Shown: positions 7,632-31,530 of the stretch, piece after piece
Layout: the number at the start of each line of letters is the position of its first letter
How positions within the stretch are numbered: position 1 is the stretch's first letter
Source: Macrostomum hystrix
Taxonomy: Eukaryota; Animalia; Platyhelminthes
DNA: 64,000 bases
Direction: 5' to 3'
NCBI GenBank assembly: GCA_950097015.1
Contig: CATNEN010000027.1
Location: 1-64,000 of the forward strand
The notes under the pieces: generated by a model
What the model was told of the DNA's origin: nothing
Databases searched by the model: none
The model's input: the letters and a program-made list of their open reading frames with translations, nothing else
Made by a program: the position numbers and the translations under genes

Positions 7632-7696
7632 TATAAGCTCTGAAACTGAAAATCATCGTGACTGGATATATTTGTTTAACTTCAATTGAATTTTTC

Positions 7697-7733
7697 AATA
7701 AAACGGAGACTGAATTGATTGAACCAAAATAAA
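7697..7733 (+). terminator. Polyadenylation signals (AATAAA at 7697 and 7728) of the + copy, mirrored at ~11578-11614 on the minus strand
   Basis: Two AATAAA hexamers 66-100 nt after the stop codon, followed by T/GT-rich sequence. Confidence 0.55.
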
Positions 7734-7929
7734 AATGTTTCTGTCTTGTGGTGGAAAAGTTGGATTGCTATACCAATCTTAATTTATTTTCTTTACGTTT
7801 TCTACTTGTTGTTACTATGTTGCTGTATTCGATTATATTTGATGGCTGAAGGATTTCGATTGGCCAGATGGTTTGTGGATGGTTGAGTGTTAAATTTATA
7901 GAATGGCAGTTAGATTCTTAGGGGGTAGA

Positions 7930-8139
7930 AAGATTGGTAGGCGGGTAGGTACATTGGTAAGAGGGTAGGCCCATTGTTAGGTGGGAAGGTACATTGTTAA
8001 GAGGGTAGGTACATTGGTAGGAAGGTAGGAACATTGGTAAGAGGATAGGCACATTGGTAGGTGGGTAGGTACATTGTTAAAAGGGTCGGTGCATTGGTAG
8101 GAGGTTAGGTACATTGGTAAGAGAGTAGTGCATTGGTAG
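7930..8139 (+). repeat. 20-bp minisatellite family (CATTGGTAGGAGGGTAGGTA-like), degenerate, containing the inverted-repeat breakpoint
   Basis: Repeated CATTGGTA/CATTGTTA units. Same family as the 33945-34800 array. Short tracts recur at ~8484-8522 (+), 9396-9500 (-) and 11319-11380 (-). Confidence 0.85.
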
Positions 8140-8483
8140 GCTGTAAATTTGTCGACGTTAAAGACCAGATGCATGATCAGTTCATGTTTGGACTCTACAG
8201 CAAGGAAATTCTGAGGAAACTGCTGGAGGAGAAGATCGAAGATCTAACGTGGGAGAAGGTTACGACCGTGGCGGCAGCATGTGAAGCTGTGAAGCGTGGT
8301 GAGAAAGACATGACTGGATCCAGAGTCCTGCAAGCTCGAATGACTAGAGGAGGACAGCAGCGTTCGGTGTAAGCGCGAAAGGAGTCTAAGCCAGACGGAA
8401 AGCACCAAAGACAGATGACGTGCTTTTGCTGTGGGAAACCCGGTCACGCAAAGAGTGATCTTTGCGTAGGTGGTGGTCTCACG
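8140..8483 (+). mobile_element. gag: Ty3/Gypsy-type gag fragment (degenerate)
   Basis: GCKFVDVKDQMHDQFMFGLYSKEILRKLLEEKIEDLTWEKVTTVAAACE resembles Gypsy gag. A zinc knuckle CFCCGKPGHAKSDLC lies at 8421-8465. Interrupted by a stop and a frameshift. Confidence 0.75.
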
Positions 8484-8522
8484 CATTGGTAATTGGGTTG
8501 GTTCATTGGTAGGAGGGTTGGA

Positions 8523-9170: not shown

Positions 9171-9191
9171 CGTTGGAATCCTCGTCGCTAT

Positions 9192-9395
9192 TGTTAGCCC
9201 TTCCGGTAATCACATGATGATGGAGACCGAAGTTCGCTTTAGTGCATACACGTCGCCATTAGCGCACAATTTTATTTTTGCTGCTCAAGCCTCATTTCAG
9301 GTCTTGGCTTGTTTGCCTCAATCTCTCTCACTCTATAGCATTCCAAGTAACGCCCATAGACATCACTTGGCGCATATGCACAACCGTGCCCCACA
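9192..9395 (-). mobile_element. Complete 204-bp LTR with adjacent primer-binding site
   Basis: Minus strand starts TGTGGGG and ends GGGCTAACA, with an internal AATAAA. It is followed by TAGCGACGAG (PBS-like, cf. TGGCGACGAG) and then the gag ATG at 9170. Confidence 0.75.
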
Positions 9396-9500
9396 CTACC
9401 AATGAACCAACCCTCCAACCATTGAACCAACCCACCTACCAATGAACTAACCCTCCTACCAATGTACCTACCCTCCTACCAATTTACCAACCTTCCTAGC

Positions 9501-11318: not shown

Positions 11319-11679
11319 GTACCTTCCCACCTAACAATGGGCCTACCCTCTTACCAATGTACCTACCCGCCTACCAATCTTTCTACCCCCTAAGAATCTA
11401 ACTGCCATTCTATAAATTTAACACTCAACCATCCACAAACCATCTGGCCAATCGAAATCCTTCAGCCATCAAATATAATCGAATACAGCAACATAGTAAC
11501 AACAAGTAGAAAACGTAAAGAAAATAAATTAAGATTGGTATAGCAATCCAACTTTTCCACCACAAGACAGAAACATTTTTATTTTGGTTCAATCAATTCA
11601 GTCTCCGTTTTATTGAAAAATTCAATTGAAGTTAAACAAATATATCCAGTCACGATGATTTTCAGTTTCAGAGCTTATA

Positions 11680-14600
11680 CTACTTGCAGTAGCCGCATGT
11701 TTTGGCGCACAATGTTCGCATCGACCGGCACATTTTGGTCTTCTTCACGAACAGGCAGTCTATGGGCCGGATTTTGTCACGACAATCTGAAAGTGTAAAA
11801 ATCAGAGGTGATATTTGCATGAAGTCTTGTTTCAGTAATTTTGACGTAGAAAAACTATGAAGTTGAAGAAAGTGACTCACCGCTCTTGGAGACACACTTC
11901 TCGCTGGCAGTGTAGCTCTTTGGTACGCACACATGCGAGCCAGGATAGGTGATGTAGTATTGCACGCAACGGATTCGCTTGCCGCACTTGCACGGTGACA
12001 CGCTGGTCCGATCGCGCGAACACTTTGGCGAGCAGGAGAATATGGCAAGGCTGCGGCGAACAACGCAGTGGCCGTGCAGGCGGACGGTGTATTGGGTGAC
12101 AACCTTGCGGATCCAGCGCTTGCCGCTTAGTTGGCACTTGTAAACCTGCTTCTTGGTGGCGAGGCTGCAGTCCTTGCAGCTTGCCAATGTGGTGTGTGAG
12201 CTAATGCGGCACTTTTCGTGAACGTAGCGGGCAACAATCTTAGTCAGCTTCCTTTTGCCGTTCTTGCACGCTCCAATGAGTCGGTAGGAGCCAACGGGGC
12301 ATTGGACGCATCGCTGGCGGTTGATTGTGACTCGGACGCGCCACAAATGCAGCTTCTTGTCATAGTAGATGTCGGCTCGAATATCTTTGCGCCAGTTGGA
12401 CTTGGAGCAGCGAGTGTGACGGTGGTAGCGCCTCGGCTGACGCTTGCAAACGCCGCAGGTATAGTTACAGAGATGGCGCACCAGAGGCTTGGAGCATTTG
12501 GACTTCTTGCAGAAGGCTCGCCTGTCTTCGCACTTGCGACAAGGCACTTCCAGTTTGTGAACCTGTCTAGTGCATTTTCCACTGCGGTCACGCTTCCAGG
12601 TAGCAACTGCTGCTGCTCGGTAGCACACGCGGTCCTTGCCGAATTTGATGCACTTACATTTGTACTGTTTCAGGACGCTACGGAAGGGGCACTTTGTAGG
12701 ACAGACGCGTTCGAACAGGATACAATCTGGAGTTTTGCGCAGCCTTAGCGATGGGAACCGCAGCAAAAGACCGTTGCGGTTCAAACGCAGCAGGGTGCAT
12801 TTGCGAGACGAGTGATCGTAGTCGAAAGCTCGGCATTTTCGATTGTGGCGGCAGCTGCGCAAGCAAATGTCGAAAGAGGAGCGCTTGGCTAAGATAAAGT
12901 CATTTCTGAATTTAGACTGCTTGCTGAGACAGAAATTTCCGGCGTACACAACTCGCGTTTTCGGACAAGCTGTGGATATTTTTTTCGAAAAAAAGTACAT
13001 CTTTTTGGGAAAGTTTGGTATCAATAAGAGTTTATACTTCTTTAAAAGCTTAAAAGCACCCTCTTTCTTGTGTAAAAGTAAAGAGGTAAAAATGTTAGTA
13101 CTTACTGTAGCATCGATGACAAGTCATCGCACACAGATGCTTGGCGAAGTAAGGATACTTGTCACACAGGTGGATTTTGGTTGAAGCAGCCCACTTTTTG
13201 CAAATTCCTGTTGGCAGCAGATCTCTGCACTTAGACTTGCATCGAACAAAACGTTTGTAGACCTTTGATAAACATTTGCATCGGCTGACCTTATGCAGAA
13301 CAACCGTGACTGCTTGCGTCTTTCCTTGACACTTCGAAACCTTTGTGTAAGCCTTTGGACAATGGATCAACTTGTAGCTTGGGAACTTGCGAAGCTCACA
13401 GCGCTTTCCTTTCAAGATATAGCGGTATACTGTTGTAACCTTTCGATAATTGCCATGACAACTGAGTCGCTTGTAGGATTTTGGACAGGCACACAGCTTG
13501 AAGAAGGTGGTGCCGACTGTCTGGCAACCACAGCCAACACGTCGCTGCCACGTCTGCACAACCTGCGCATATTTACCATCCGACTTCACGTGACGACAGG
13601 GGCCAACTTTGTTGTGGCGTTTGGAGCTGCAGGTCACACGCTGACGTGAGTTTACTCGAGTGCGATGGACGCATCTATTACCATCCTTCTGCCACCAGTG
13701 GTGTAAGAAAACCCAGGAGCCAGAGCGGCACTGCTTCACTGTATAGCCACGTCTGCATCGGCAGAGCTCCTGGCGTGACTGTGTGCTCTTGACGCAGCTG
13801 CAGTCTCTCTTCTTCCAATGATGCTCCAGTTTTGTTTGGTAGTAGCCGTCTCGTTTTGCGATGCACTTGAGGCGCTCCACTCGCCATCCAGGACAGTGGA
13901 CAGGACGAACAATTTTGCGAGACACCCGACGACAACCAGATCCACGGAATTCAAGCCAGGACTGTACCTCAACGTGTTCGTGACGACGCTTGTCACAGTA
14001 GCGAACCTTCTTGTACTGTCTCTTACAGCCTGGAATGGGGTGTTAAGTTTTGCTGGAATAATAATTCATACAATTAGACAAATCAAATCTGAGATCAGTG
14101 ATGATTACAATGAACTCACAGCAAGTCACTTTCCATGCGTGAGAATGGCGCACGCAGCGGCAGTTCTGCACTGTGTACCATACGCTTCCCATGCTTCTGT
14201 TGCAGCTGAAACGATCGCATTTGCCCTTGAAATTCTGGCGACGGTTGCAAATCACGCGAGTTGTGTAACAGTTTCGGTGTAAGATGCAAGCAGACGGCGT
14301 GAGAGTGTAGGTGTAGCGGCAGTTTTGCACGCTATCGCCTCTAATGCAGACGCTGCGCAAATAAGGTTTCGGACAACGACACCGAATAAGGCGGTGTCGG
14401 CGGGCAAGTCGACAGCGGCAACCCGAAACGTGTCGAGTTTCAGTTGTCTCTTTCCTCCAACCGTCTCTGCGACACGGTCCATGACGAATCGCCTGGCGAG
14501 GCTGGCAAGACGCATAGACGTGAGAAGAAATGTCATGTCTCTGAACGCGCCGATGACACGCGTGGTTGCGGAATTTGTAGGTGATAAAAACTTTGAACAA

Positions 14601-17600
14601 CCGGTTTTTGTGGCACTCCTTGTGGCTACTGTCGCGATGAACGCAGCAGCACAGCTTCCACCAGCTGCTGGATCGGCGGACACATTTTTTAGTGCGCGTA
14701 TCGAGATGGAATGTGATGCGAGTGTAAACTCTACGGCAGTTTTGCTTTTGGCATACGGAGTGTCGAAGGACTGGCTTATCACAGGCCTTTTTGCAAATCC
14801 TCTCAAACAGACGTGTCGCGGAAAAGCGATACCTGCAAATTTATCCAAGGTGAAGAATTTACTCAATACATTGCAGTAGATAAAAGTGTAAAAATAATTA
14901 AGAGGCAGTCTCGCTTACTTGCGGTAAAAGCCTAGCTCCATATAGTGCAGCTTGGTTGGCTTAGAGGCTAACCACTTGATATAGCGACCTGATTTGGGGA
15001 TTGGCTGGAATCCAACAACAAACAGGCTGGCCTTGCGCTTGATCTTGTCCGCCAGTTCAACTGTCTTGCGTCGTTTAATATGATTGCCACATGTAATGAC
15101 CACAACAATCTTCTCGACACCCGACTGAGACCGGGTATGTAGACGTTTGTTCACTTCACCAAGGGCTGCGCAGAGGTTCGTACTGCTCTTTGTGAATGCT
15201 TTAAACGGCAGGTACTTCACATGCTTAAGTTTTTGCACGTGCACGCTCCAGTTATAAGAAACCAGAGTTGTACGAACTCTGGCTGACGTCTGCTCAAAGT
15301 ACTTGCATACAGTCCGTAGGAAGTTAGCTACTCTTTCCTTGTATCCGCGCCTGTCCTTGCCGAAAAGGTCTACAACAAGGTAAAGCTCAACAGCCTTGTG
15401 AGCGCAAGCACACTTGCGGTATTCGAAGCGCACACGACGCACGCAGCGACAGCCGATTTTCACCCAGAAGTGAACGCTGTACTTCTGCTTTCCCTGCTGG
15501 CACTTGCCTTCTATAGCTTTGGATACGCGACGTGAGCAGTTCACAGGTCTGTATGAGTCATGTGTATTGGAGTAGCAGCGGCCGTTTTTGAGCTTATGCG
15601 TGAGTCTTCTAGTGCGCACCGTACCACGGATGCAAGCTTTTACGCTGGTAGGCTTAGGGCAGCAGCACATGCTCTTTTTCGACCATGTTTTGAAGTGACA
15701 CTTACAATTGTGAACGCTGTATTCTTTTGTAAAGTCTGTACGCTTGCAGTTGTGACAGTGGCTGCGTCTTGTCGTCCTTGGACAATGCACTCGTTTACGT
15801 GTGACTCTACTGTAACTGACACAGCGACAGCCAACCAAACGCCAGCAAACTTTCACGGCTATAAGATTTTTGCCATGCTCGCATTTGTACGTGAGAGTGC
15901 AGCCGCGACACCGAGAGTGACAAGGCTCGCGTCTGGTTTGTCGGACACATCTGCATCCAGATAGCACGAAGCGCTCATAAACTTTGTAGAAGATTGGGCT
16001 GCCTGATGTGTGGTGTGACAGCCGCCAAGCGTTTTTGCATTTGACAGCATAAGATCGACGTCTTACAGCCTTCTCACACTTGCCGCGGCTCAATTGATAA
16101 GACACATTCACTGTGACGATGTGGCCTCGTTCGCAGTAGGTATTTTTCTCTGGCTTAAAGCAGCTGCAGACCACTGACCTAGTTCGGATTCTTCTGTGGC
16201 ACTTGCAGGACTTCTGGTACCAAGACACAGTCGTCTCCACGTAATAGAAGCCGTACCTTGTTCGCTTGTTGCAGTGCGTTCGAGAAGAAGTGCTTGGCTT
16301 GCAGTAGATTGGTTTGTCAGTGCAACGCGTTTGTCTGAGGCATCGACCATGCGATAGATGCCATACTGTGATGTACGTGTGTTGGTGGCAGCGCCCATTT
16401 TTGCACTTGCATACAAGTCGTCGGATTGGCTTGTTGCATTCTGAAATATTTTTGAAGCGTAGAATAGTAACTGAGAGTAGAATCAGAGCAGAATAATCGT
16501 AAAATCCTGCAGACTAAGATTCAAAGCATCGCTATTTACTCACTATATTTTCGGAATACTGTCTTGCAACGCTTAGCACAGCCGCAGCCTTGACGGACAA
16601 CCCAGCAACTGACCACCTTAAGAACTCCATTAGAGAGCTTTTGCTTGCGGACCGTAGGGTTTCTTTTGCACTCTGAAAAATTTTTAGGCCATATGTTATA
16701 TGCCAAACTGAAGGTTATAACAATGGTTCGCAGCAATCTACTTAATTATTACTTACTAACTTTCTTGCTGTTCTTTGTCACTACCTTGATACAATGCCAG
16801 TGTTTTAGAACCCGCTTAGTGACAGTCGTAACAAGGTATCCCTGTTTGTAGATGCATTTAACTCGACGCGCATAACCTTTGCAACAGCATACACGATGTT
16901 TGTGATAACTCTTCCAGATGCAACTCTCGTCTTTCAGAACTTGTTTTTTAAACAGAAGTTTCTGACGGCAAGACTTTTTGTTGCAGCTTCCAGTAGACAC
17001 AAGTTTGCTTCCATTATGACAGCCTAGAAATGAAATTACACTGCGTATATTCAGTCCATCAAATTATGCGATCGAGAATTCTAATATGAAAAGTCCGAAA
17101 AGGGCTTACCACAACGGCGCAAGTGACGTGTTACTTTGCTAAAGCAATGGCACTTCTTGACGTATGTCTTCGTGACGAAGATGCTAAGGACGCCTGACTT
17201 TTTGTGGCAAACTCGCTTTACCTTCACACCACCACAGCGTACTCGTTCCCGCTGTAAGACTACTTGAATTCGACGACATTGGCCACGAACTAATTGTCGC
17301 TCGGTGACTTTCAAAACCTTGATAAAGCCAGCTTCGCACTTGCGCTTAACTTGGCGACGCTTGTCGCAACCACAGAGTTGATGGTGAACCTTGTGCTTGC
17401 GTTGACACTTGCAGCGACGTACTAACCACTTAGTCTCAGTCAGCTTTCGGTACTTGTCTCCATCACGACCTCTGGTACAATGACCCTTGCTTCGATGCGT
17501 CTTCTTACAACGCACTGACTGACGAGAGACACTTCTGTCTCTGTAGCACACGCACTTGTGAAGAGTCGACTTCGCTTTAACTGTCACCCAAATACGGCCG

Positions 17601-20600
17601 CTGCTACAATAGCGCTTAATTGTAGGCTTGCGACAGCGGCATCGACAGTTGCGTCGGGTCACGCGCTTAAGACAGTGACAGTTTTTGAGGGTTCTAACTG
17701 TTGTTGTAAAGTGTCGAATACCCTGATAATTGCAACCCGAGCGCTCAACGGAGTGACCGACAGCACACGGAACCCGGTGCTTACGAACGTGCTTTTCTAG
17801 CTGACAGCGTACTTTCAGTTTCTTTCCTACTAGACGCCAGTTTTCTGTGACCGTTACCCAATGATTGGAAAGGCAACGCTTTGTAGCGACCGACTTTCGG
17901 CACCTGAAATGCGTGGAGATAAAATACGTTCGTAGTAATTCGTAAGGCGAAGACAAATATCCAAATCTGATCATACTCTTACCTGCACGGTACAGCAACA
18001 CGTCGCACTAGCTGCAATACGCAGCGGCAACGACTAGCGCGCCTTTGATATAACCAATAGGTACGCAAACCATTGCGCTCACAATTGCCACGCTTTTCCC
18101 ATCCGCCCTTGCAGTTGACAATGAATACCGAGTCGTGAGAGCGTCGCGTGCAACCATCGCCCTTGGGCACCCACCATGTGGTGGTCGTCACCAATCGGTT
18201 GCTACCAACGCAGCGGGTCTGTTTCTTCCGACCGTATTTTCTCAGGCAGTCACAGACGCGCTTTCGCTTCTTAAGTGAATAAACACATTTGCAGTTCTTC
18301 GCTTGCACGTAAATGTACTTTAGAACTTGAATAAAGCCGTTGTGTTTGCTACATTTTCGAGGTTCGGTTTCAACGCGCACCAATCGTGAGTTTGTAGAGC
18401 ATGGCAGCCGGTTTTTGTGCTCATTACGTTTTCGCTCGCAACTGTTGCCACGCAGTTGGTATGTAACAGTCACGAAAACCTCAAGATTATGGGACTTACA
18501 TATACGCTTTCTATAACCCTTCGGGCAGCGACAACGACGCTTTTGCCGGTGACTGACGTACTTCACGCATTTCATCTGTGGCTTGTTCGTTCCAGGGATA
18601 TTCTTTCCTGTGGGCTGTAGCTTGTAGGCTAGCCAAGTGTCAAGAGCGAACCAGCGACCACACTTTCCGCGATGGTAAATCCTCGCCTTCGAACAAGAGC
18701 AACGCTGCTTGTGTTGCGTTACCCTGGCTTTGCATCCGCATGCGACAGCGTAGTGCACTGTCTTAGTAACTTTTCTGAAGCCCTTGTAACAATTGGAAAC
18801 GCTATATTCAGGAGCTTTTCGTCCACAGCGGACTCGCTGAGTTCGAACTATTCGTTTACGATGGCATGCGTGATGACGCAGAATGTAGCTGGTAGTGATT
18901 GCCACTTTCAGGTGACGGCTAGCGTCGCATGAGTGTTTAGTGACATGTTTTGGGCAGCAGCATTTCAGTGGTTGCACTCGCAGTAGTTGTGCAACGCACT
19001 TGCAGTTGATGTGCTTGTAGACGTAATGCCGCACAGCGAAGCCACACCGCTTGCATGCGCTTGGTCGACTGAATGGAGCCTTACAATGAACTGGTTTGTC
19101 ATGACGCTTTATGTCACGCCGGCAAGTACGTTTTCCAGCAACGCTGTGGAAGCTGATTTTCTCAAAGCGCAGTACACGGTTGTTCAAACAACGAGTTGAA
19201 TGCCCTGGCTTTCGGCACTTACAGATTCGGTATGTTAGCGACCGCTGCTTCCACACACAACCGCATCGGACCATCGCTGACCTTGTGGAACTGGCGAATT
19301 TCTGAGTACTTGTCTCCCTCGCGGTTCAGTTTGCACTTTCCGTTGTTAGTCTTTGATCCGACACAGTCTGCAAAATTGAAAGTGGTACTTGTTACAAGTT
19401 TTGCATTAAGGCTTTATGTTCAAAGTCATTTGCCGTGAACAAGACAAAAGTCGAAAAGATGACTTCTTTTTACTTACGAATCTTTCGCTCAACATTGGCC
19501 ACTTTTCGCACGCATTGACCTCGAACCAGCTTATAATAGACCGTGGTGAAAAGCTTCACGGAGCCGCGTACGCAACGAACAGACTTGCGCGTGCTATATT
19601 TCTTTATCAGGTGACAGATGCATGGCACCCAGCGGATCGTGTGCCGGCGCTCGCAACGACATTTATTGTTTACCTTCCACTCGGTTAGAAGCTTCTGGTA
19701 GCCACGATGCTTACTTCCGTATGCTGTGACACAGCTACCCCGGACGATCCGGCTTCTGTGACGCCCGTCGCAGTCTACGGGTAAAGATGCAATCGGAGCA
19801 TGGTTTTTTGTTAAATAGTGCTGCTATAATTTCGCAGATTTAGCAGATATAATAGTTGTCATTCACTTACAAACAGGTTTTGCGATATTTTTTATCGATC
19901 TAACGCAACGTTCCCCACGTTGCTTGTAAATGAAAAAAGTTGTGACATATGCGCCGTGCTTGCACACAGTTTGTGAATTATTTCGTTTGTGACAGTCACA
20001 GTCGGCTCGTCTGGGGTGCACGCTTCTTACACAGGTGCACCTGTTCTTGTCAAGCCGCCAAATGTAGCGCTTTATGATGCGGCTGAAGTGTATGCAGCGA
20101 CCTCGCGCTTCTTTGTGCACAGGACACGTGTGTGGCCGTCTTCTGCAGCGCTGGATCTTCAAACAGCGCTGTCGACGGAACTGGAGCTGGTAGCTGATGT
20201 GGCAGGTCTTCCAGTGGCCGCGTCGATCGCAGACGGTGAACTGGCTACCCTTCAAGCAAGCGCATAAGTAAGTAAACCTACGTACTTGACGGATGCAGGC
20301 TCGATTCTTCAGTATGAAATACGTCAGCGTCTTTACTCGGTACCTATTGAGACACCCGCTCCATCGAACCTGTTGCGGTGGACAACCTGTTTGTTGCAAA
20401 AGAAAGAACCTTGTATAAAAATGTGCACCGCTGGGACTATCCAGAAGATATTAAGCATAGAACTATCACTTACTGCATTTGCCTCTCCAGCGCTTCTGTT
20501 TCTTTACACAACCGCAACCGACTCTGTGCCAAACCGACTCAGTTTTGCTCCAATGTCCGGACCGTCTGTTGCAATTCTCTATTAATTTTCGCCTGGGACA

Positions 20601-23600: not shown

Positions 23601-26600
23601 TTACTGTCTCATGCTTGATGCATTGACGGCAAGTGTGCGTGTTACAACCGAGAACTCTGGTGACCCCTCTGCGACAATGAACTGTTTTTCGCGTTTCCTT
23701 CACATTTCGCTCGCAGCGACCATGCCGCAAATGCCAGCTAGTGTGATACCAGACCTTGAATCTATTATTTTGACAGACAGGGTCGGATGTACTGGGCCGA
23801 GGACAGCAGCAGACGCGGTAACCATAGTCCTCGCGTTTTTTGCATCCGCAGTTCTTAAGCGAATAACTGACGTACGTAATGCGCTGCCGGCAAGATGCTC
23901 GGTTGCATTTAGCAACACTCTTATCAGGTCGTGGACACCTAACACACGAGCTCGCTTGACTATTGTGCGCAACACACACTCGTCGCTTGCTGTTGTATGT
24001 GTATCTTGTCGCCCTCTTGACCCAACAGTTTCTCTCGCAGCGCACATTGTGATGAGGTCGCTTATTGCAGCAGCAAGGTCTTACATAACGATTGCGAATT
24101 ATACGTTGGCAGCGGCAGTGCGGTCTGACGACAACGCTCACAATCGTGTGTACAGGCTGGAGACACTTGACGCGGTCGCATCTAGAGCAGATTTAATTGT
24201 TTAGGGTCACCGGTTTGATCCCTTATATCCTTTGTGTTAAGACAAATATTAATCGATTGCACTACTCACCTTCCTATTTTGATTTCAGGTCTCTGATCGC
24301 AGCTCCAACGGCGCAGATGACGCTGACTAGTGCGTCGAACACACTTCCAGTTGTGCAGCTGATAAAAGATGCGCTTCTCGTATATGCTGCTGAGCTTGCA
24401 GAATCTTTCGAATCGAGGTTTAGTCAGACAACAGCAGGTGCGCTTCTTGCCAGTAAGACTTTGCCTTTTCTGACAGAGGCACCGCTTGGCCGCATAGTAT
24501 GTAACCTAGAGATCGCAAGAGCGAAACCGTTCGAACTTTGAAGTACATGGTAGTGAAATAGCAATCTGTATTTATAGTCAATAAGCCAGAAAAATATGTA
24601 CCTGTTGTTGACTATGGCAAGAGCGAGGATTGCACTTAAGCCACTTGTATGTTTTTCTTGAGGAACAGTGCACCCTTTCGCGCCGTCTCGTGACCCATTT
24701 ACGGCAGCCGCAGCCACGTCCGGTTAGCGGGGCGTGGTGCGTAAACACTCTCTCCCATTCGTCATCACGAGCGCAGTAGCGATTGTTGGATCCCTTGGCG
24801 CAGCAGCAAGGGCAGCGACGCCTCTTGACGACAGCGAAGTAGCAGGCGCATTTGCTCGGTTGCAATCGCTGCTCCAGTGTATAGTGATAGCGGTGACAGC
24901 CGTGACAGCTGGTGAAGCGGTCCCGCAGCACGCGACGGCAATGGACCCGTTGGCTGTGCTTCACAACCTTCTTGTAACAGCGCGCGTTTCTTAGAATGAA
25001 CCGCACCGACTCGGTGACCCAGTGACCGGTCTTGCAATAGCGGCGCTTGTAACCCTTCGGGCAGCGGCAGCGAATGTGCCGAGTAATATAGCGCTTGGTC
25101 TTACACCTGTGATGCTTCATGTCCCAGCGACGAATTTCAATCACCTCACGGCGAGTGTATCCATTTCGCGGACACTTATACTGTCGGATCACTCTCTTAC
25201 AGTCTGAAAGGCAATTGTTCGATTTTTACACTGACGATAAAGACAATGCGGATCGCAAAAACTATCATCAACAATTAAATTTGCTTACGGCAGTTTCGCT
25301 TCTTCTTCAACTCCCTGCGCACACATTTGCAGTCCTTACGAACGTAATAAACTTTGGTCTCAACGTAGTACTTGTTCTTGATACACTTGCTGTTGACGTA
25401 TTTTGCCTTGATGCGACACACTAACACGGGTGGGTTTCTTCATGTAGTTATACACGCATGTTACACTTATCAGTAATTTTATAAAGCAATTCAACTCACA
25501 AACTCTATGACTGGTGCTTCTCTTTCGTGTCACGCAAACGCCTTTACGGTTGCTCCACTTTCTTGTTATCAGAACACTGACAATCTTGCCTTGCACCTTT
25601 TTGCAATAGCGCTGACGCTCGATTCGCTTTCCATAGCAGCCGCACTTCACATGGTAGCGTTTAACAAGCCTGACGCAGCGGCAGTTCCTCTTCACTGAGT
25701 AGTGTTTCAGCAACAGCTGCTTGTGCCTGGCTTCATCGCAGTTGCGCTTCTCCACATAGGCTTTGGGGCAGCGGAAGCTGCGATAGGACTTCCTGGAACG
25801 CTTGACGCACTTGCCAAGCACCAGCACGTAGTAGAATCGCTCCTTGCCCTTCAGATTTCTGCGCTTGTCGCAGAAAGGCCTAACAGTTTTCTTTACTCGC
25901 TTGTTTTCTCGGTGACAATCTGCAAAGAAGCATTGATTTACTCAGGTTACTCCGGTGTGCGCACACATACCTTTTTAACAGTACAAAGACCACGAGCTAT
26001 TTCAGATACCCACCCTATCTACTTTGCACCCGCATTCGTATTACAGCGAATATTATCGACATGATTTACTCACTGCATCTGTGACGCTTGTCGTGCACCG
26101 ACCAGACTAAAACACAATTGCACTTCTTTGGCCGCATGTAGCCGAAATAGACTATCTTCACTCCAGTCTTGCGATTGCACACTGTCTTCGCGCGGATGCT
26201 GCTGGAGCAGCTCACTCGGTTTCTCTCCGTGCGACTCCTCTTCAGGCAGTGTCCGTTCGACAGGACCCAGTAGGTGATTTTCTTTTCGAACGCGTTCAGC
26301 CTGGGATTGCAGTAGCTTCGACCAGCTACCGGCTTAGGGCATTCTGAAGATTTTATTAAATATTGATTAACGTTTTAGTGTACGGTTGATTCAAGCCTTC
26401 TCGAAGTTTCGGTATGTGAGTTTAAGAAAAATAGATGAAGGTTTCAGCAGTGGTCACTCACTGCAGCGAAGACGCTTGGATGACTTTCGGAGCAGGCACT
26501 TGCAGCCCTTCTGCTGATACCACTGCTTGTAGTGAGTAATGACGCCGGAATGCTTGTTGCAGTGCTTCCAGACTTTGACAGCGCGACTACAACGGACTGG

Positions 26601-29600
26601 AACGCGGCGATCGCGCACGTGACGAACACATCGAGTGCAGCCGTGCAGGCTCCAGGTGACATGGCGCGTGACTTGATCTCGCTTCACTGCGTCACAAAAG
26701 TAACTCTTGCTCGGCTTGTAGCAGTATTTCCTGCAAGTTCGCTTAGTAATGCGAACACGGCATTTGCAGTTCGAGACGTACCAGTGGTAGGTGGCCAAGT
26801 AGTAGTAGCCCACCTTCGGGTGGCCAACCTTCTTAGTCTCAGTTTTCTTCAGGCAGCGCACTCGCTTGCTGCTAGAATCGAACACGCGGTGGCACTTGTG
26901 TGACCTGAGCACATAGTAGCTGACCTGCTGCATCTGGAAGTGATTGTCCTTGCACCAGTTCTTAACCCGCCTCTCGGGCCGGCAGCAGCAACGGAAGTTC
27001 AGTCGCTTAAAAATGTGCTCGCGGCAGCTCTTGCCATAAGCCTTGTAATAGTAAAACTCCTTCGAGAATGAGCATTGCCGACCGCAGTTCTTGGAGGTGC
27101 AGCCCCTCGGACACCTCGTCAATCTGGTGTATTTTCCGCCTCGGCAGCCGCACATCTCCTTTACTGTCCTCGTCGCGCGCTCGCAGACGCAGCTGCCCAA
27201 GCGTCGCCGGTAAAAGTGGAACTCAACGCGCCTGTAACGGACATTGCCAAACAGGATGTGGCACGGACCTGGCACTCGCTTCACGTCACGTCTGCACTCT
27301 GAAGTTGAGAACAAATTTTTAAGTGTGAGAGTCGTTTGAACTGCTTATTGAAACTGAGAATCACCATAAGTCACAAGCCGAACTTACTGATATTAACCCT
27401 TCTCGACGAGACTTTCTTTATGCAATTGTTGCCTTGCTTCACAAACCAGTGCTTGATGAAGATTCGGCTCCCCTTGCGTCCATCGCACTTTACATTCTGA
27501 TAACCTTTCGGGCAGGCGATTCTAATCTTGTGCACTTTTACCTTTCTGTGGCACTTGTAGCGAATCAGAACGTAGGTGACAATGATAAGCTTCTTCCAGT
27601 AACGATCGACACGAACAGTTCTTTTTGATCCAGGTGGACAGCCTAAATCAAGTTGAGAATAGTAAAAGACATTGACATCTATATGACATTTAAACTGCAA
27701 AATCTTTATGACATTTGTAGCCTAGTGGTTAAAGCGTCGGACTCACGACTTAATGGTCTGGGGTTCGATTCCCGACTACACTCAAATAATTTGTATCCTT
27801 TAGCAAGACACTTAACTCTGGATTGCTTCAGTTCACCCAGCTGTTAAATGAATACGAGCTACCAGCATTAGCTAGTGTAAGTGAGTGCGAGTGTGGCGGC
27901 CCCCCAGTCCATGGACTGAACAGCCGAATGCAGCCTTCAGATGCATCGCACAATTAGGTCAGGTGTAATAAGAAAAGAGACAGGAATTTCGCAGAAACTA
28001 CTTACAGCATTTGCCCACTGGTGCAGTTTGTGAATTCTTCGTGCACTTGCAGCCTCGCAAGTGAAAGTAGCTGACATGCTTGTATGCCTTGCATGTTGAT
28101 CTTTGACACGTTTCCCAACTCTTATAGTTCCGCTTGCATTTAATGTACCGCCTGGACTTGTGGTGATAGCGCCAGCAGACACCGCCTTTCAGCTTCCAGC
28201 TAGTTGTCTCAGTTAGGAAGTGGTCTCCCTTGCAAACAGTACCCGACCTGGGCTTGCTGCAGCGGCACATGACCTTCCTGGTGCGAACTAGCCGAGACAG
28301 GCAGCGGCAGTTGTGGGCATAGCGCTGGTAAGTCTTCTGGATGATGTAGTCGCGTTGGTGAGTGCACTTTCCAGTGTGGTAGGTGCCGCCGCATTCTGAA
28401 GTGAATTTCCGAGTGACAATTCTAGCAAAACAATCTCAGCTGTTCATTCGAAATTGTAGTTTTGCTCAATAGACGCAAACTTACTAAGTTTCTGCAGCAC
28501 CCTCTTGTTGGTCACCAGAGCGCATTGTGTACAATGCTTGACAGCCGTGTAAGTTTTGGTGATTCTCACTTTGAGAATGTGGCGCATGCAGCTGGTATAC
28601 GAGACGCTCTTCTGCTTGCCGACTGGTGGGCAATGGCACTTGCGACTCGCCGAGAGCGCAGTGCGAACACACCTGTGCTTGCCATGCTTCTCTCTGTACT
28701 GCAACAGTCGCTTGCCAGTCTGGACACCTTTGCAAAAGTTGCACTTACTCCAGGTGATCTTGGACATGTAGCGACAGGCTGAAATTATTCATTAGTAAAA
28801 AACTCATCCAATATATTTGTGGCAGGGCTGTGGGCATACAAACGCACACAGATGCTGTACGCAAGCACACGCTCACACAGGTGTGTACATCTGCCCTGAC
28901 TTTCTCATCGTCATGCAGTGTAGGCCTTGTAGTGCCTTTGAGGTTGGCCCTCGAGAGCGTAAATTTCATGACAAGCCCCACAAGAATTCTCTCCACAGCT
29001 GAGCCCCAAATGAATGTGGCCTCACCGCGGAATCGAGCTCGCGGACCTTGGTGCGACAGACAAACGTGTTAGACCACAATCCCATTCGACGAAATGAGTA
29101 AGCTAAATGAATCAGGACAGCAAAATGAGACTTACATCCGCACGGATAATATCGAGTCAATGTGCTCTTTCTGCATCTGCCTTTCGAGTCCGCGTACCAG
29201 CGCAGAGCTGTGACCGCCTTGTTCTTGTACTTGTAGGAGCACTTCGAGCTGACTGTGCGCTTCGGTGGGCAGCCTGAAGTATTAGCACAGGCGGAAAATT
29301 GTTCGTAAGTTGTCAATAGGTTGCTTTTTCATTGACGAAAAGAGTCTCAGAGATTTTGTGTACACTCACCGCATTTTTTGGGCTCACATGTGGCCTTGCA
29401 CATGACCCGGTAAAACTTCTTTTGGCATTTACCCTGCGTCTTAATCTTTTCGCACAGCAGTGTGCTAATCTGGTTGCGGCATCGCGGTGTGCACATGCCG
29501 CAGGTGAGCCGACAGAAGCGCCCCATGACTTCCGGGTATCTTCTGCACCGGCCTTGGGCCTTCCAGCTGCGGCACTTGCTGTGGGAAACTCGGTCGATGC

Positions 29601-31472
29601 ACAGCTTGGCCAAGCACTCGCAATGCTTCGGCTTGACGCATTTGCTGCCGTCAAGCACGTAGCCTTTGTTGCAGCGACATCCCTCCGCCTGAGGCAGCTT
29701 GTAGCAGCGTCGTGGAGTGCCAAAGAAATGATTGTCGCAGGTCTTCGGGCAGGGATTGGCTTTGCGACTAAAGTGCTGATGCTGGCCACACTTCATAACT
29801 GCAAGTGGTCAGTAAAATCGAAGCGCATTTCGCAACGGAAGTTAAATTTGCAATATTTGAACTAAACATTAACTCCAAAGAAACTCACGGCAGCCGCTCT
29901 TGTGCCTCCAGGCCAACGGACGGTGGTGCCGGGCGCAGCGTCTTGAGTGCAGGTAGAAATTGGCGCACAGGGCTTTCTTCTGCAGGTCCGGCCGGTACCG
30001 CTGGCTGCAATAGTCGATCATGCAGGGCTCAAGTACTTCAGTGTTGGAGCAGCTGCCGCGGCCGTTAATCACTTTCCTGCAGGCTCCTTCTGCCTCTCGC
30101 CTCTCGTCTCCATGGTGGCATTTGAGCGCACTTGTTTCCTTTCGGCAGTCGCGAATCCAGCCTTTGCGCTTCCACAGTTTGTAGGCGTGGCTCAGCTGGC
30201 CGAACTTGTCGTCATGCCGGATTCCGTTGCAGTTGCCGGCCAGGCCGCTCAGCCGGCCGCGATAGGCGCCACCGAAGCGGAAGGTGCCAGTGAACAAGCC
30301 GTCGAAGGTGACCCAGAAGTCGCAGCGCTTGCTCACCAGGACGAGGTCTTCACCGGAGTAAAAGGCTCGAATCCCGTGCTCGCTGTACGGCAAGTTCACC
30401 GGCTTGCCGTTTTCCTGCGAGTGCGGCCGAATTATTCGATGTGATTTTCGTCCATGTTTTGGTGAAAAGAGAAGTCAGTAAAAGCCTATACAATTTCCTC
30501 GCTGGCTACAGTATCGACTGTCGCCAAATGGTGCGTTAGAACCACTCGGTAAGTGATATGTACAGCTAGAGACAACAACAACAGTCTGTTTCGTAAGTTT
30601 TTAAATACAATTAAGCTCAGACACTCAGGGATGAGTGGCAGGCTGGGTTAACGCGTTTGCGTCTTGCACCAAGGTCCTTGAGCTCGATTTCGCGGCGAGG
30701 CCACATTCATTTGGGGCGCAGCCGCGGAGAGAAAGCTGGGGGCTTGTCGTGCAATTTACGCCCTTGAGGGCCAACCTCCACGGCACAATGAGAGTGTACA
30801 CTGCCTGACGATGAGAAAGTCAGGGCAGTTGTACACACCTGTGTGAGTGTGAGCCTGCGTACTGTATCTGTGAGCGTGTGTACTCAGGAGTCAGGGGAAA
30901 GGGCAGAATTGCCTCCTCGCTGGCTGTTGGTCTAGTGTCACTAAATGGTGTGCCATTGCCCGCAGCCCTCCTGCAATTGCTATCATTATTATTGTTTTTA
31001 TTAAGCTCAGATACTCACCAGCAAGCGCCGTCCACTCAGCAGTTTGAACACCTTGCCGTTAATTACAGCTGTCAGTTTCCGCAACTGCGACAGCTTGTGG
31101 CGGCGATCGTGATGGTGCCCGTGCTTGGACTTGGCGCAGCCGAATGTGGCAAACAGCTCCAGGCGGCAAAGCTGAAGCTGTGATCGAGCCAGCAGGAACT
31201 GGCAACCTCGTGAGTATGTGCTCACATGACCACCATCGAACTGGTAGATGTGGCCATTGGCACCGCCGACACTGCCATAGCATTCTGTACAGTTAATGAG
31301 CAAAGAAACTTTTATTATACTGTCGCGTTCAAGCAGTAAGACAGCATAATTCACATTGAAATGCTGAAACAAAAGTCGAAGGCTTACCCTGCCTAGCGTG
31401 GCCTAATCTCGTTTGTTCGGCCAGTAGGGCCAGTAGTATGAGTACTGCAGCGATGCTCGGAGACCAACCCAT
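11680..31472 (-). CDS. Giant secreted Cys/Lys/Arg-rich multidomain protein (~5,326 aa, 30 exons): SP-vWD-C8-TIL-ShKTx2-(Cys repeats)-vWA-(Cys repeats)-ShKT-PAN-ShKT-(Cys repeats)-ShKT. This copy carries a +1 frameshift at 19268/19269
   Basis: Exons traced by hand (all GT-AG): 31388-31472, 31019-31284, 29889-30414, 29370-29798, 29136-29273, 28485-28778, 28006-28395, 27388-27642, 26462-27298, 26074-26343, 25500-25919, 25289-25420, 24602-25203, 24270-24505, 23277-24181, 22901-23185, 22688-22825, 21422-22597, 20474-21328, 19871-20386, 19478-19774, 17983-19367, 17110-17903, 16757-17023, 16544-16672, 14919-16440, 14120-14832, 13106-14029, 11881-12969, 11680-11786. All phases join, giving 15,981 nt once the extra base is removed. 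The N-terminus MGWSPSIAAVLILLALLAEQTRLGHA is a signal peptide. Confidence 0.85.
12700..12969 (-). other. PAN/Apple domain (mirror ~6342-6610, +). ShKT domains flank it at the end of exon 28 and in exon 29, and another forms exon 30
   Basis: CPKTRVVYAGNFCL...SFDICLRSCRHNRKCRAFDYDHSSRKCTLL...DCILFERVC. ShKT motifs CRDLLPTGICKKW...HLCAMTCHRC, CEDRRAFCKKSKC...HLCNYTCGVC and CRDKIRPIDC...TLCAKTCGYC. Confidence 0.75.
14919..15394 (-). other. vWA domain with degenerate MIDAS (mirror copy 3917-4392, +)
   Basis: ELYLVVDLFGK...RTTLVSYN...STNLCAALGEV...KIVVVITCG...SLFVVGF...LASKP follows the vWA strand/helix pattern. Confidence 0.75.
27717..27945 (+). mobile_element. tRNA-derived SINE with a CORE-like central domain (in intron 7 of the giant gene)
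   Basis: A box TAGCCTAGTGG and B box GGTTCGATTCC, followed by TCCTTTAGCAAGACACTTAAC...CACCCAGCTGTTAAATG. The 3' motif CCCCCAGTCCATGGACTGAACAGC recurs inverted at ~46487-46510. Confidence 0.7.
28810..29075 (-). mobile_element. SINE family 2 copy (intron 5 of the giant gene)
   Basis: Shares GTGTGTACATCTGCCCTGACTTTCTCATCGTC, GAGGTTGGCCCTC and CCCCAAATGAATGTGGCCTC with the 30628-30999 copy, in opposite orientation. Confidence 0.75.
29370..29798 (-). other. TIL domain plus two ShKT domains (exon 4)
   Basis: TIL: CGQHQHFSRKANPCPKTCDN...CYKLPQAEGCRCNKGYVLDGSKCVKPKHC. ShKT: CIDRVSHSKCRSWKAQGRCRRYPEVMGRFCRLTCGMC and CRNQISTLLCEKIKTQGKCQKKFYRVMCKATC. Confidence 0.82.
29889..31284 (-). other. vWD domain followed by C8 domain of the giant protein (exons 2-3)
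   Basis: CYGSVGGANGHIYQFDGGHVSTYSRGCQFLLA...ENGKPVNLPY...FDG...GRLSGLAGNCNG matches the vWD pattern. ACRKVI...CMIDYC...ALCANFYLHSRRCA...WRHKSGC matches C8. Confidence 0.8.
30628..30999 (+). mobile_element. SINE family 2, full length, with an 18-bp target-site duplication
   Basis: Degenerate A and B boxes (TGGCAGGCTGG, GAGCTCGATTT) and an (ATT)n-like tail. Flanked by ATTAAGCTCAGA(C/T)ACTCA at 30610-30627 and 31000-31017. Homologous to the copies at 28810 and 39615. Confidence 0.75.
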
Positions 31473-31530
31473 TGTGAGTCTGTCGCCGAGGAGTCCCTGA
31501 CTTGAGTCTTGGGGGCCGATTTCCCAGTTC

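What the first reader, a model, noticed from the sequence alone, without database searches (positions are those of the whole stretch)
11680..31472. Giant (~5,300 aa) secreted polycationic, disulfide-rich protein built mostly from an unnamed alternating two-module Cys repeat
Seen: 30 exons splice into one frame. Most of it alternates module A (C-P-K-x(4-7)-C...V/T-x-W/Y-x-L-x(3-4)-C-x(~11)-V-x-C) with module B (C-x(3-5)-G...C-x-C-x(~10)-C-x-C), for example CPKHVTKHSCDASRHLKVAITTSYILRHHACHRKRIVRTQRVRC|GRKAPEYSVSNCYKGFRKVTKTVHYAVACGCKARVTQHKQRCSC. I estimate 40-50 pairs of ~85-90 aa. Lys, Arg and His are abundant and acidic residues scarce. Established: vWD-C8-TIL is the polymerisation unit of gel-forming mucins and VWF, and the Macrostomum adhesive protein Mlig-ap1 is also huge, K/R-rich and carries these domains. 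Inference: this is a non-glycosylated, disulfide-locked cationic fibre, glue or secretory-granule scaffold, for example an adhesive, rhabdite, cement or antimicrobial coat protein. I do not recognise the repeat as a named Pfam family.
Basis: partly seen in the sequence, partly recalled or inferred. Interest (0 to 1): 0.85.

Follow-up and report, generated by a model that had tools for sequence, protein, structure and literature searches.

The report
Giant flatworm protein, new cysteine repeat
A Macrostomum flatworm transcribes one 30-exon gene into a 16-kb mRNA for a 5,326-residue secreted, very basic protein built from about 45 copies of an undescribed 86-residue cysteine domain; similar giant proteins occur in tapeworms, flukes and schistosomes, and none has been studied.

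Summary
On the minus strand, 30 GT-AG exons (CDS 31472-11680) give a 5,326-aa protein: signal peptide, VWD-C8-TIL, ShK domains, about 44 significant 86-88-aa Cys repeats, a VWA, more repeats, PAN, and a C-terminal ShK. It has 9.8% Cys, 30% K+R+H, 4.6% D+E and net charge +1086.

Spliced contigs from four runs confirm all seven junctions tested. One contig is 16,109 nt, which fits the full model.

The assembly carries one extra C at 19269. The transcripts and the mirrored copy in the window lack it.

The repeat has no Pfam or PDB relative. AlphaFold2 gives an all-beta model at pLDDT 97. Its A and B halves are homologous.

A search of 1.84 billion cluster representatives finds only 90 hits, and every named one is a flatworm protein. 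They include collinear 5,275-5,604-aa proteins of Echinococcus and Schistosoma, none with a curated name.

It is not Mlig-ap1. The architecture differs.

Function is inferred. My best reading is a disulfide-stapled extracellular rod or scaffold that binds polyanions and may multimerise through its D assembly. Tissue is unknown. Orthologues in parasites argue against a role limited to adhesive organs or rhabdites.

The scan's first stage noted a likely paralogue elsewhere in this genome (s1-337224).

The parts
11562..31479 (-). Approximate transcript span (about 16.1 kb mRNA after splicing)
   Evidence: The spliced contig of run X2 is 16,109 nt. Its offsets at 17109 and 22827 fit the model with about 118 nt of 3'UTR and 5-7 nt of 5'UTR. 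The X4 contig ends about 14 nt upstream of the ATG (with exon sums). The ends are inferred by arithmetic, not seen directly.
11680..31472 (-). CDS in 30 exons: 31472-31388, 31284-31019, 30414-29889, 29798-29370, 29273-29136, 28778-28485, 28395-28006, 27642-27388, 27298-26462, 26343-26074, 25919-25500, 25420-25289, 25203-24602, 24505-24270, 24181-23277, 23185-22901, 22825-22688, 22597-21422, 21328-20474, 20386-19871, 19774-19478, 19367-17983, 17903-17110, 17023-16757, 16672-16544, 16440-14919, 14832-14120, 14029-13106, 12969-11881, 11786-11680
   Evidence: All introns are GT..AG and the frame is open apart from the break at 19269. Seven junctions are confirmed by RNA contigs. The first 1,515 aa are collinear with the M. 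lignano orthologue, with no gap at 11 of the 12 junctions there; a 2-aa insertion in M. lignano sits at junction 1.
31388..31472 (-). Exon 1: start codon and signal-peptide-like leader
   Evidence: This is the only segment of the protein with a 19-aa Kyte-Doolittle mean above 1.5. The leader is conserved in M. lignano P0017. No signal-peptide predictor was available.
30208..31284 (-). VWD domain (exon 2 plus the start of exon 3, with a 604-nt intron between)
   Evidence: Pfam VWD scores 23.8 bits against a cut-off of 22.9 on exon 3. Exon 2 carries the start of the domain by alignment with paralogues.
29893..30120 (-). C8-like segment (eight cysteines between VWD and TIL)
   Evidence: Assigned by position and cysteine count. 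Pfam C8 is not detected here, but it is detected in paralogue P0097. The orthologue model is helical here and aligns with D assemblies.
29620..29790 (-). TIL domain
   Evidence: Pfam TIL 32.7 bits, cut-off 24.5.
29371..29601 (-). Two ShK-type domains
   Evidence: Pfam ShK scores 28.8 bits (cut-off 20.9) for the first. The second is assigned by cysteine pattern and a weak Crisp hit, and it is conserved in paralogues.
15404..29273 (-). Repeat array I: about 39 significant 86-88-aa units, each an A and a B half-module
   Evidence: Self-HMM. No Pfam family reaches its curated cut-off in any exon of the array.
21828..22343 (-). A-B-A-B segment that was modelled
   Evidence: AlphaFold2 with a 92-row alignment: mean pLDDT 97.0, pTM 0.67, twelve beta strands, three per half-module.
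19269..19269 (-). One extra C in the assembly, which breaks the frame in exon 22
   Evidence: It is left out in the contigs of X10, X4 and X2 (table 4) and is absent from the mirrored copy.
14942..15379 (-). VWA domain, with DLFGK in place of the DxSxS MIDAS motif
   Evidence: Pfam VWA 31.9 bits, cut-off 23.8. The motif was read.
13227..14832 (-). Repeat array II: five significant units and one partial unit
   Evidence: Self-HMM.
12701..12901 (-). PAN/Apple domain
   Evidence: Pfam PAN_1 30.8 bits, cut-off 21.4.
11683..11784 (-). C-terminal ShK domain, followed by stop codon TAG at 11682-11680
   Evidence: Pfam ShK 23.5 bits, cut-off 20.9. The same terminal ShK ends the Echinococcus, Hymenolepis, Schistosoma and Paragonimus proteins.
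11579..11614 (-). Two AATAAA signals (11614-11609 and 11584-11579)
   Evidence: Read from the sequence. The second fits a transcript end near 11562 (arithmetic).
1..7995 (+). Inverted copy of the gene's 3' third (mirror of 11316-19311), cut by the window edge
   Evidence: An inverted repeat of 7,953 nt at 100 %. It continues to position 1 with a single 1-nt difference.

Best explanation
Shown.
This is one real, transcribed 30-exon gene of a Macrostomum flatworm. It encodes a 5,326-residue secretory-pathway protein. The order of parts is: signal peptide; one VWF/mucin-type D assembly (VWD-C8-TIL); two ShK domains; about 39 units of an undescribed 86-residue domain with 8 conserved cysteines; a MIDAS-less VWA; five more units; a ShK-like segment; PAN; degenerate units; and a C-terminal ShK.

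Each unit is two homologous half-modules, A and B, of about 43 residues. Each half is predicted as a three-stranded beta meander. Introns sit at the module borders.

The protein belongs to a family found only in flatworms. Collinear 5,275-5,604-aa counterparts exist in cestodes and schistosomes.

Inferred.
The units stack into a long, disulfide-stapled, largely single-layer beta rod. In Macrostomum each unit carries about +19 net charge. I think it is an extracellular structural scaffold (matrix, surface coat or stored secretion). The basic beta faces would bind polyanions such as sulfated glycans. VWA, PAN and ShK would dock it to other matrix components. The Macrostomum-specific D assembly would let it form multimers in the secretory pathway. 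Tissue and partners are unknown.
For: Gene and transcript:
- GT-AG model with one open frame.
- Seven of seven junctions tested are in spliced contigs of four runs, with contigs of 16,109 and 12,159 nt whose offsets fit the model.
- The first 1,515 aa are collinear with the M. lignano orthologue.

Secreted type:
- Hydrophobic segments occur only at the N-terminus.

Domains:
- Pfam VWD, TIL, ShK, VWA and PAN_1 above their cut-offs.
- D-assembly fold of the orthologue, E 1e-18 to VWF, MUC5AC and MUC2.

Repeat:
- 44 significant units.
- pLDDT 97 all-beta model. Independent AFDB models of flatworm relatives superpose at TM 0.66-0.74.
- A and B are homologous: hhalign probability 93.9 %, E 1.6e-7.
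- 20 of the 22 introns in the array lie at a unit border or an A/B border.
- Cysteine co-loss supports pairs C3-C32, C45-C75 and C59-C87.

Family:
- 90 hits among 1.84 billion representatives, and every named one is Platyhelminthes.
- The same VWA...PAN...ShK-COOH tail is seen in Echinococcus, and VWA plus terminal ShK in Schistosoma.
- Unit order is partly collinear with Echinococcus: Spearman 0.45, p 0.0025.

Charge:
- +9 to +26 per unit.
Against: - No expression site, partner or phenotype was obtained. The function is inference from composition and domains.
- The extreme positive charge is not conserved. Net charge is +155 to +188 in cestodes and +511 in Schistosoma. Polyanion binding may therefore be a Macrostomum speciality rather than the family's core job.
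- Only one D assembly is present and no CTCK, so multimerisation is unproven.
- I had no coordinates of the model. Rod geometry and the disulfide map are indirect, and the C12-C73 pair rests on five informative units.
- The assembled copy has a frameshifting extra C, so this particular copy might be inactive.
Confidence: 0.6

Rival explanations
1. It is a component of the duo-gland temporary adhesive. It would act as a cohesive polycation like Mlig-ap1, released from adhesive gland cells and neutralised by an anionic releasing factor.
For: It is huge, K/R-rich and Cys-rich, with vWD-C8-TIL. Mlig-ap1 is described in similar terms (PMC6410801). Transcripts are present in whole-worm libraries.
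Against: The architecture differs from Mlig-ap1, ap2 and ap3 as published. There is no C-lectin, EGF array, low-complexity KR region or TSP-1. Collinear orthologues exist in cestodes and schistosomes, which to my knowledge have no duo-gland organs. The published screens for adhesive-organ transcripts, as read here, describe no protein of this layout.
Confidence: 0.08
2. It is an epidermal or gland secretion: rhabdite or mucus matrix, or an antimicrobial cationic surface coat. It would be stored condensed in granules and expand or bind microbes on release.
For: It has a polycationic, disulfide-rich, secreted composition. The D assembly is the module used to pack VWF and mucins in granules. ShK and PAN are common in surface-coat and apical-matrix proteins of other invertebrates (my own knowledge).
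Against: To my knowledge Neodermata lack rhabdites, yet they keep the orthologue, without the D assembly and with far lower charge. No tissue evidence was obtained.
Confidence: 0.15
3. It is a reproductive structural secretion, such as eggshell, cement-gland or Mehlis-gland-type material, or an ejaculate component. Reproductive ducts are shared by free-living and parasitic flatworms.
For: Conservation across all flatworm groups sampled would fit an organ system common to all. The disulfide-rich, basic composition suits a hardened coat.
Against: No tissue evidence was obtained. It is not enriched in Tyr or Gly, as I would expect of tanned eggshell precursors (the expectation is my own knowledge).
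Confidence: 0.12
4. The copy in the finding's coordinates is a broken duplicate. The extra C at 19269 is real, and the transcripts come from the mirrored copy or another locus.
For: The assembly has CC where three transcript contigs and the mirrored arm have C. The 3' third of the gene lies in a palindrome.
Against: The two arms are otherwise 100 % identical over about 19.3 kb combined. That pattern suits a consensus error or an assembly fold-back better than an old pseudogene. No other stop or shift occurs in 16 kb of coding sequence.
Confidence: 0.2

Closest known systems
Uncharacterised flatworm giants: Echinococcus granulosus EUB62272.1 (auto-named 'Collagen alpha-3(VI) chain', 5,275 aa), Schistosoma curassoni unnamed product (5,604 aa), Hymenolepis diminuta A0A158QEB2, and M. 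lignano fragments PAA59660.1, PAA60779.1 and A0A1I8FT25
   Same: They share the repeat unit, with 35-42 units each, and a similar total length. They share the tail order repeats-VWA-repeats-(PAN)-terminal ShK. They align end to end with the window protein. The M. lignano fragments are 54-67 % identical and look like direct orthologues.
   Different: The neodermatan proteins go from the signal peptide straight into repeats, with no VWD-C8-TIL. They keep a DxSxS-type MIDAS motif in the VWA. They are far less basic. The database names I saw are automatic or generic, and the accession searches I could run found no paper.
Mlig-ap1, the cohesive adhesive protein of Macrostomum lignano (Wunderer et al. 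2019, PMC6410801)
   Same: Same genus and similar size (5,407 aa). It is secreted, very basic, Cys-rich in part, and contains vWD-C8-TIL.
   Different: Mlig-ap1 has low-complexity KR regions at both ends and a central C-lectin, vWD-C8-TIL and 17-EGF core. Here the basic residues sit inside folded Cys modules and the D assembly is N-terminal. VWA, PAN and ShK are present, and no lectin or EGF array is found. Direct sequence comparison with MH586844 was not possible.
Gel-forming mucins and von Willebrand factor
   Same: The N-terminal D assembly has the same fold. Both are large secreted disulfide-rich proteins.
   Different: There is one D assembly instead of D1-D2-D'D3. There is no PTS region (at most 32 % P/T/S in any 50 aa). 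No CTCK is detected, and the protein ends in ShK. The GDPH motif is replaced by GANGH in this gene, although paralogues keep it.
Tandem thrombospondin type-1 repeat arrays (ADAMTS, semaphorin-5) and midkine/pleiotrophin
   Same: They are strings of small three-stranded, disulfide-stapled beta modules. Midkine and pleiotrophin are basic heparin binders (my own knowledge). These are the weak top leads of the Swiss-Prot fold search and of the language-model search.
   Different: No significant match was found (E 0.05 or worse, TM below 0.25). There is no Pfam TSP_1 or PTN_MK hit in 92 double units. The consensus has no WxxW motif.
G5-E repeat rods of bacterial surface proteins (SasG/Aap type)
   Same: Both are elongated, flat, three-stranded beta modules in tandem. 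G5 appears as a weak structural analogue in three searches.
   Different: G5 rods are bacterial and cysteine-free. The matches are only Z 3.6-3.8 or TM 0.34. This is an analogy of shape only.

Membership tests
Flatworm giant-repeat protein family (unnamed) | Tandem 86-aa units with conserved cysteines at profile positions 1, 3, 12, 32, 45, 54/56, 73 and 75 | tested here: met
   44 significant units in the window protein. The same profile finds 14-42 units in the largest flatworm hits. Cysteine frequencies over 425 units are.
Flatworm giant-repeat protein family (unnamed) | Tail order VWA ... PAN ... C-terminal ShK, about 1,100 aa from VWA to the end | tested here: met
   Window protein. Echinococcus P0002 has VWA, a weak PAN_4 and a terminal ShK. 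Schistosoma P0111 has VWA and a terminal ShK.
VWF/mucin D assembly | VWD, C8 and TIL in this order, with the D-assembly fold | tested here: met
   VWD and TIL score above the Pfam cut-offs. C8 is assigned only by position and cysteine count. The model of the 66 %-identical orthologue region matches VWF D1 and D'D3, MUC5AC, MUC5B, MUC2 and FCGBP at E 1e-18 to 1e-13 over about 350 columns.
Gel-forming mucin / VWF polymer | Several N-terminal D assemblies (D1-D2-D'D3) | tested here: not met
   Only one VWD was found in the whole protein.
Gel-forming mucin / VWF polymer | C-terminal cystine knot for tail-to-tail dimers | tested here: not met
   No Pfam Cys_knot hit was found and the protein ends in ShK. 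The PROSITE CTCK profile could not be run.
Gel-forming mucin / VWF polymer | Long Pro/Thr/Ser-rich O-glycosylated region | tested here: not met
   The maximum P+T+S content is 32 % in any 50 aa.
Mlig-ap1-type cohesive adhesive protein | Low-complexity Lys/Arg-rich regions at both ends, and a central C-type lectin, vWD-C8-TIL and about 17 EGF modules (PMC6410801) | tested here: not met
   No Lectin_C or EGF array in any exon. The basic residues lie inside Cys modules. The D assembly is N-terminal.
Mlig-ap1-type cohesive adhesive protein | Expression in adhesive gland cells, presence in footprints, and loss of adhesion on RNAi | not testable with these tools
   No tissue-resolved data were reachable.
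Cystine-knot (CTCK) domain | CxGxC and CxC motifs forming the knot ring, with a Pfam or PROSITE match | tested here: not met
   No Pfam Cys_knot hit in 19 + 92 unit sequences. The consensus has no CxGxC. By co-loss, the CxC at positions 73/75 pairs with cysteines 33 residues apart, C12 and C45. No CTCK structure appears among the fold matches. Caveat: some AFDB relatives are auto-named 'CTCK domain-containing', and that profile was not testable.
Thrombospondin type-1 repeat | WxxW and RxR layers, the six-Cys TSR pattern, and a Pfam TSP_1 match | tested here: not met
   No TSP_1 hit at E up to 1 in 92 double units. There is no WxxW in the consensus. Fold matches to TSR arrays are not significant.

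The most novel reading that the evidence does not exclude
The 86-residue unit is a new extracellular domain fold specific to Platyhelminthes. About 100 half-modules would build a disulfide-stapled beta rod that is a core structural component of all flatworms, for example of the sub-tegumental or apical matrix. It has been kept at about 5,300-5,600 residues since before free-living and parasitic lineages split. It would then be a previously unnoticed flatworm-specific extracellular protein shared by the major human and veterinary flatworm parasites.
Probability: 0.3. Interest if true: 0.8.

Novelty: new variant of a known kind. Interest (0 to 1): 0.6.

Why it matters
Giant modular secreted proteins with a D assembly are a known kind. 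This one consists almost entirely of a domain with no Pfam model, no solved relative and no significant fold match, yet it is predicted with very high confidence.

The family appears confined to flatworms. Within the phylum it is conserved in size and layout from a free-living Macrostomum to Echinococcus, Taenia, Hymenolepis, Schistosoma and Paragonimus, and the database names there are automatic or generic.

That gives three openings. One is a tractable structural question: what is this fold, and how does a 100-module rod behave? The second is a genetic entry point, because RNAi is used in Macrostomum (PMC6410801) and, to my knowledge, in schistosomes. The third is a conserved, extracellular, phylum-restricted protein of important parasites.

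In Macrostomum the charge is extreme, about +19 per unit. This makes it a natural example of a folded, rather than disordered, polycation, which is relevant to work on bioadhesives and coacervates.

Tried and rejected
- Automatic best-score splice picking chose many wrong long introns. I replaced it with shortest canonical GTRAGT...YAG pairs and hand checks.
- Identity with Mlig-ap1: rejected on architecture.
- Pfam on every exon, on 19 units and on 92 double units: nothing for the repeat. A lone DUF7830 hit (20.3 bits, below the 27.5 cut-off) in one unit was not seen in any other unit.
- PDB sequence search with the unit profile: nothing below E 1.
- Fold searches of the A-B-A-B model. Foldseek against PDB: no E below 0.001. 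VIA wide: best Z 4.4, generic beta meanders. ESM Atlas shape search: best TM 0.45. Swiss-Prot models: TSR arrays at E 0.05 or worse. The language-model search gave only weak TSP1 and PTN_MK leads, scores 0.58-0.62.
- Literature searches by M. lignano, Echinococcus, Taenia and Hymenolepis identifiers and by database names: no paper. Searches on Macrostomum secretions, rhabdites and single-cell atlases gave no lead.
- I could not obtain the S. mansoni gene identifier, so schistosome atlases could not be consulted.
- Sample accessions for two unnamed hits did not reveal the organism.
- ARAGORN on the gene region: no tRNA. Rfam on the window: nothing.
- Model coordinates are not exposed by the tools. 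Disulfide pairs were therefore inferred from co-loss of cysteines only.
Full report
**What is there**

The coding strand is the minus strand. Stop-free blocks rich in Cys, Lys, Arg and His cover almost all of 31300-11680. I joined them with short canonical introns.

This gives a 30-exon model: ATG at 31472, TAG at 11682-11680, and 29 GT..AG introns, of which 24 are phase 1. Most introns are 75-154 nt and three are 357-604 nt. AATAAA signals follow the stop.

The product is 5,326 aa and about 630 kDa. Its composition is R 13.3, K 11.7, C 9.8, H 5.0 and D+E 4.6 %, with 524 cysteines, net charge +1086, computed pI 10.3 and only 9 N-glycosylation sequons.

The only hydrophobic stretch is the N-terminal leader. 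No 50-aa window exceeds 32 % Pro/Thr/Ser.

**RNA evidence**

I laid contigs of four public runs on 17000-22900. All seven predicted junctions in that stretch are present as clean skips with CT..AC ends on the plus strand, which is GT..AG on the gene strand.

Two runs that the index guessed to be DNA (X2) or left unclassified (X4) in fact hold spliced contigs, of 16,109 nt and 12,159 nt. Their offsets fit my exon sums. There are 4,751 coding nt below 17110, which leaves about 118 nt of 3'UTR. There are 6,070 coding nt above 22825, which leaves 5-16 nt of 5'UTR in both contigs.

This is strong, though arithmetic, support for one roughly 16.1-kb mRNA.

The first 1,515 residues also align with an M. 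lignano protein (P0017, PAA59660.1) at 66.5 % identity. There is no gap at 11 of the 12 junctions in that region. The only junction-adjacent gap is a 2-aa insertion in M. lignano at junction 1.

**A flaw in the assembled copy**

The transcripts use the acceptor at 19367. In the assembly one extra C at 19269 then shifts the frame.

All three contigs that cover this place leave one letter out (table 4). The mirrored copy of the gene's 3' third, at window 1-7995, also lacks the C. That copy is otherwise identical to the gene.

I read the break with X in my own scripts. It is either a consensus error or a mark of an inactive arm of a very young, or artefactual, palindrome.

**Named domains**

Pfam finds these above their curated cut-offs:
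- VWD, 23.8 bits
- TIL, 32.7 bits
- ShK, 28.8 bits, and 23.5 bits at the very C-terminus
- VWA, 31.9 bits
- PAN_1, 30.8 bits

An eight-cysteine segment lies between VWD and TIL.

I modelled the corresponding region of the M. lignano orthologue (pLDDT 68, pTM 0.60). It matches VWF D1 and D'D3, MUC5AC, MUC5B, MUC2 and FCGBP D assemblies at E 1e-18 to 1e-13 over about 350 columns. The D assembly is therefore real.

The VWA has DLFGK where a MIDAS motif would be. Every other exon was scanned, and no family reached its cut-off.

**The repeat**

An HMM iterated on the protein itself finds 44 significant units of about 88 aa, plus several partial ones. Units share 20-30 % identity, with invariant cysteines. 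The array is therefore old, not a recent tandem amplification.

The consensus pattern is CxC-P-K-P, x4-5, C, a beta stretch ending Y-x-L, C, about 11 residues, V-x-C, then C, a second beta stretch, CxC, about 10 residues, and the next CxC.

The two halves are homologous to each other: hhalign probability 93.9 %, E 1.6e-7, collinear over 41 columns.

Twenty-two introns fall inside the array. Fourteen lie in the codon between the two cysteines of the unit-border CxC, and six lie at the A/B border. All twenty are phase 1. This is the signature of module duplication by symmetrical exons.

Co-loss of cysteines across 425 units from the whole family supports these pairs:
- C3-C32, phi 0.81
- C45-C75, phi 0.80
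- an optional C59-C87, phi 0.91
- C12-C73, on few informative cases
- C54/56-C86, weakly

**Fold**

I modelled an A-B-A-B segment (21828-22343) with AlphaFold2, using 92 aligned double units from the window and its relatives. The model has mean pLDDT 97.0 and pTM 0.67, with twelve strands, three per half-module.

AFDB cluster models of flatworm relatives superpose at TM 0.66-0.74. Outside the family nothing convincing appears:
- Foldseek against PDB: no hit below E 0.001.
- VIA wide: best Z 4.4, generic 40-residue meanders.
- ESM Atlas: best TM 0.45.
- Swiss-Prot models: tandem TSR arrays of ADAMTS and semaphorin-5 at E 0.05 or worse.

The unit profile finds no solved relative by sequence. No Pfam family is shared by more than one of 19 single or 92 double units.

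Weak, recurring resemblances are to TSR and midkine-type modules and to bacterial G5 rods. These are leads about shape, not membership.

**Family and distribution**

The unit profile was scored against 1.84 billion cluster representatives. It gave 90 hits at E 0.001 or better, 24 of them below 1e-30.

Every hit that carries an organism name is a flatworm protein. The species are Macrostomum lignano (several paralogues of 3,700-4,100 aa, plus orthologue fragments), the monogenean Cichlidogyrus, the cestodes Echinococcus, Taenia, Hydatigera, Hymenolepis, Anoplocephala and Sparganum, and the trematodes Schistosoma, Trichobilharzia, Heterobilharzia, Paragonimus, Echinostoma and Calicophoron.

The Echinococcus protein is 5,275 aa and is auto-named a collagen VI chain because of its VWA. 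It aligns with residues 400-5326 of the window protein in one piece. It has VWA about 1,100 residues from the end, a weak PAN and a terminal ShK. Unit-by-unit best matches are partly collinear with it: Spearman 0.45, p 0.0025. Schistosoma proteins of 5,604 aa have the same VWA and terminal ShK.

The neodermatan proteins start with a signal peptide followed directly by repeats. They keep a DxSxS-type motif in the VWA. Their net charge is +155 to +511, against +1086 here. The cysteine scaffold is therefore the conserved part. The D assembly and the extreme charge are features of Macrostomum. Paralogues keep GDPH in their VWD, whereas this gene has GANGH.

**Organism**

An earlier follow-up in this scan calls the genome a Macrostomum flatworm. 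My results agree at genus level. The best matches are M. lignano proteins at 54-67 % identity. This suggests another Macrostomum species, but the library holds only one representative per 50 %-identity cluster, so it is not proof.

**What it is not**

Mlig-ap1 is described with low-complexity KR regions at both ends and a central C-lectin, vWD-C8-TIL and 17-EGF core. Mlig-ap2 and the polyclad and proseriate adhesive proteins have other layouts again. None matches this protein.

It is not a gel-forming mucin either. It has one D assembly, no PTS region and no CTCK by Pfam.

**How it most likely works**

The following is inference. A leader, an even number of cysteines (524), tandem beta modules with four to five disulfides per 86 residues, and adhesive-type end domains point to an extracellular structural protein.

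Three-stranded modules with hardly any hydrophobic core, rich in Thr, Val, Tyr, Lys and Arg, would form a long, stiff, largely single-layer beta rod. In Macrostomum each unit carries +9 to +26 net charge. The rod should therefore bind sulfated glycans or other polyanions along its whole length. The D assembly could add pH-dependent multimerisation in granules, as in VWF and mucins.

Orthologues in parasites lack the D assembly and most of the charge. I therefore place the ancestral role in a matrix or coat common to all flatworms, with the adhesive, rhabdite and reproductive readings as less likely rivals. None of these could be tested here.

**Verdict**

The protein is a new variant of a known kind: a modular secreted giant built from an undescribed, flatworm-restricted domain.

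Noticed in passing
window 1-7995 (+) and 11316-19311 (-): The 3' third of the gene lies in a tail-to-tail palindrome. The arms are identical except for one C (19269). The left arm runs off the window edge. This is either a very recent duplication or an assembly fold-back.
   Followed up: partly
window 7996-11315: The palindrome spacer holds a retroelement integrase ORF (10067-11269, +) with Pfam Integrase_H2C2 and rve.
   Followed up: partly
window 32203-64000: About 30 kb is made of many unrelated minisatellite arrays (periods 12-42 nt, up to 107 copies), with strong GC and AT skews. It starts about 730 bp upstream of the gene's ATG.
   Followed up: no
window 27643-28005 (intron 7): The 363-nt intron contains a string resembling a tRNA T-arm on the opposite strand, perhaps a SINE remnant. 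ARAGORN finds no tRNA.
   Followed up: partly
P0097, P0020, P0003, P0037 (alignment A4): Paralogues of the giant gene keep the GDPH motif in their VWD. From my own knowledge, this motif is an autocleavage site in some VWD proteins. This gene and its M. lignano orthologue have GANGH instead.
   Followed up: no
P0002, P0111 versus the window protein: Cestode and schistosome orthologues keep a DxSxS-like motif in the VWA and lack the D assembly. Net charge falls from +1086 in Macrostomum to +155 to +511.
   Followed up: partly
run X11: A sediment metatranscriptome holds 15 % of the sampled words of the gene. The animal, and this transcript, can therefore be picked up in environmental RNA.
   Followed up: no
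window 11680-31472, plus strand: Many 60-215-aa ORFs antisense to the gene are Ala/Ser/Thr/Leu-rich. They look like by-products of the Lys/Arg/Cys codon bias of the coding strand. I saw no evidence that they are genes.
   Followed up: no
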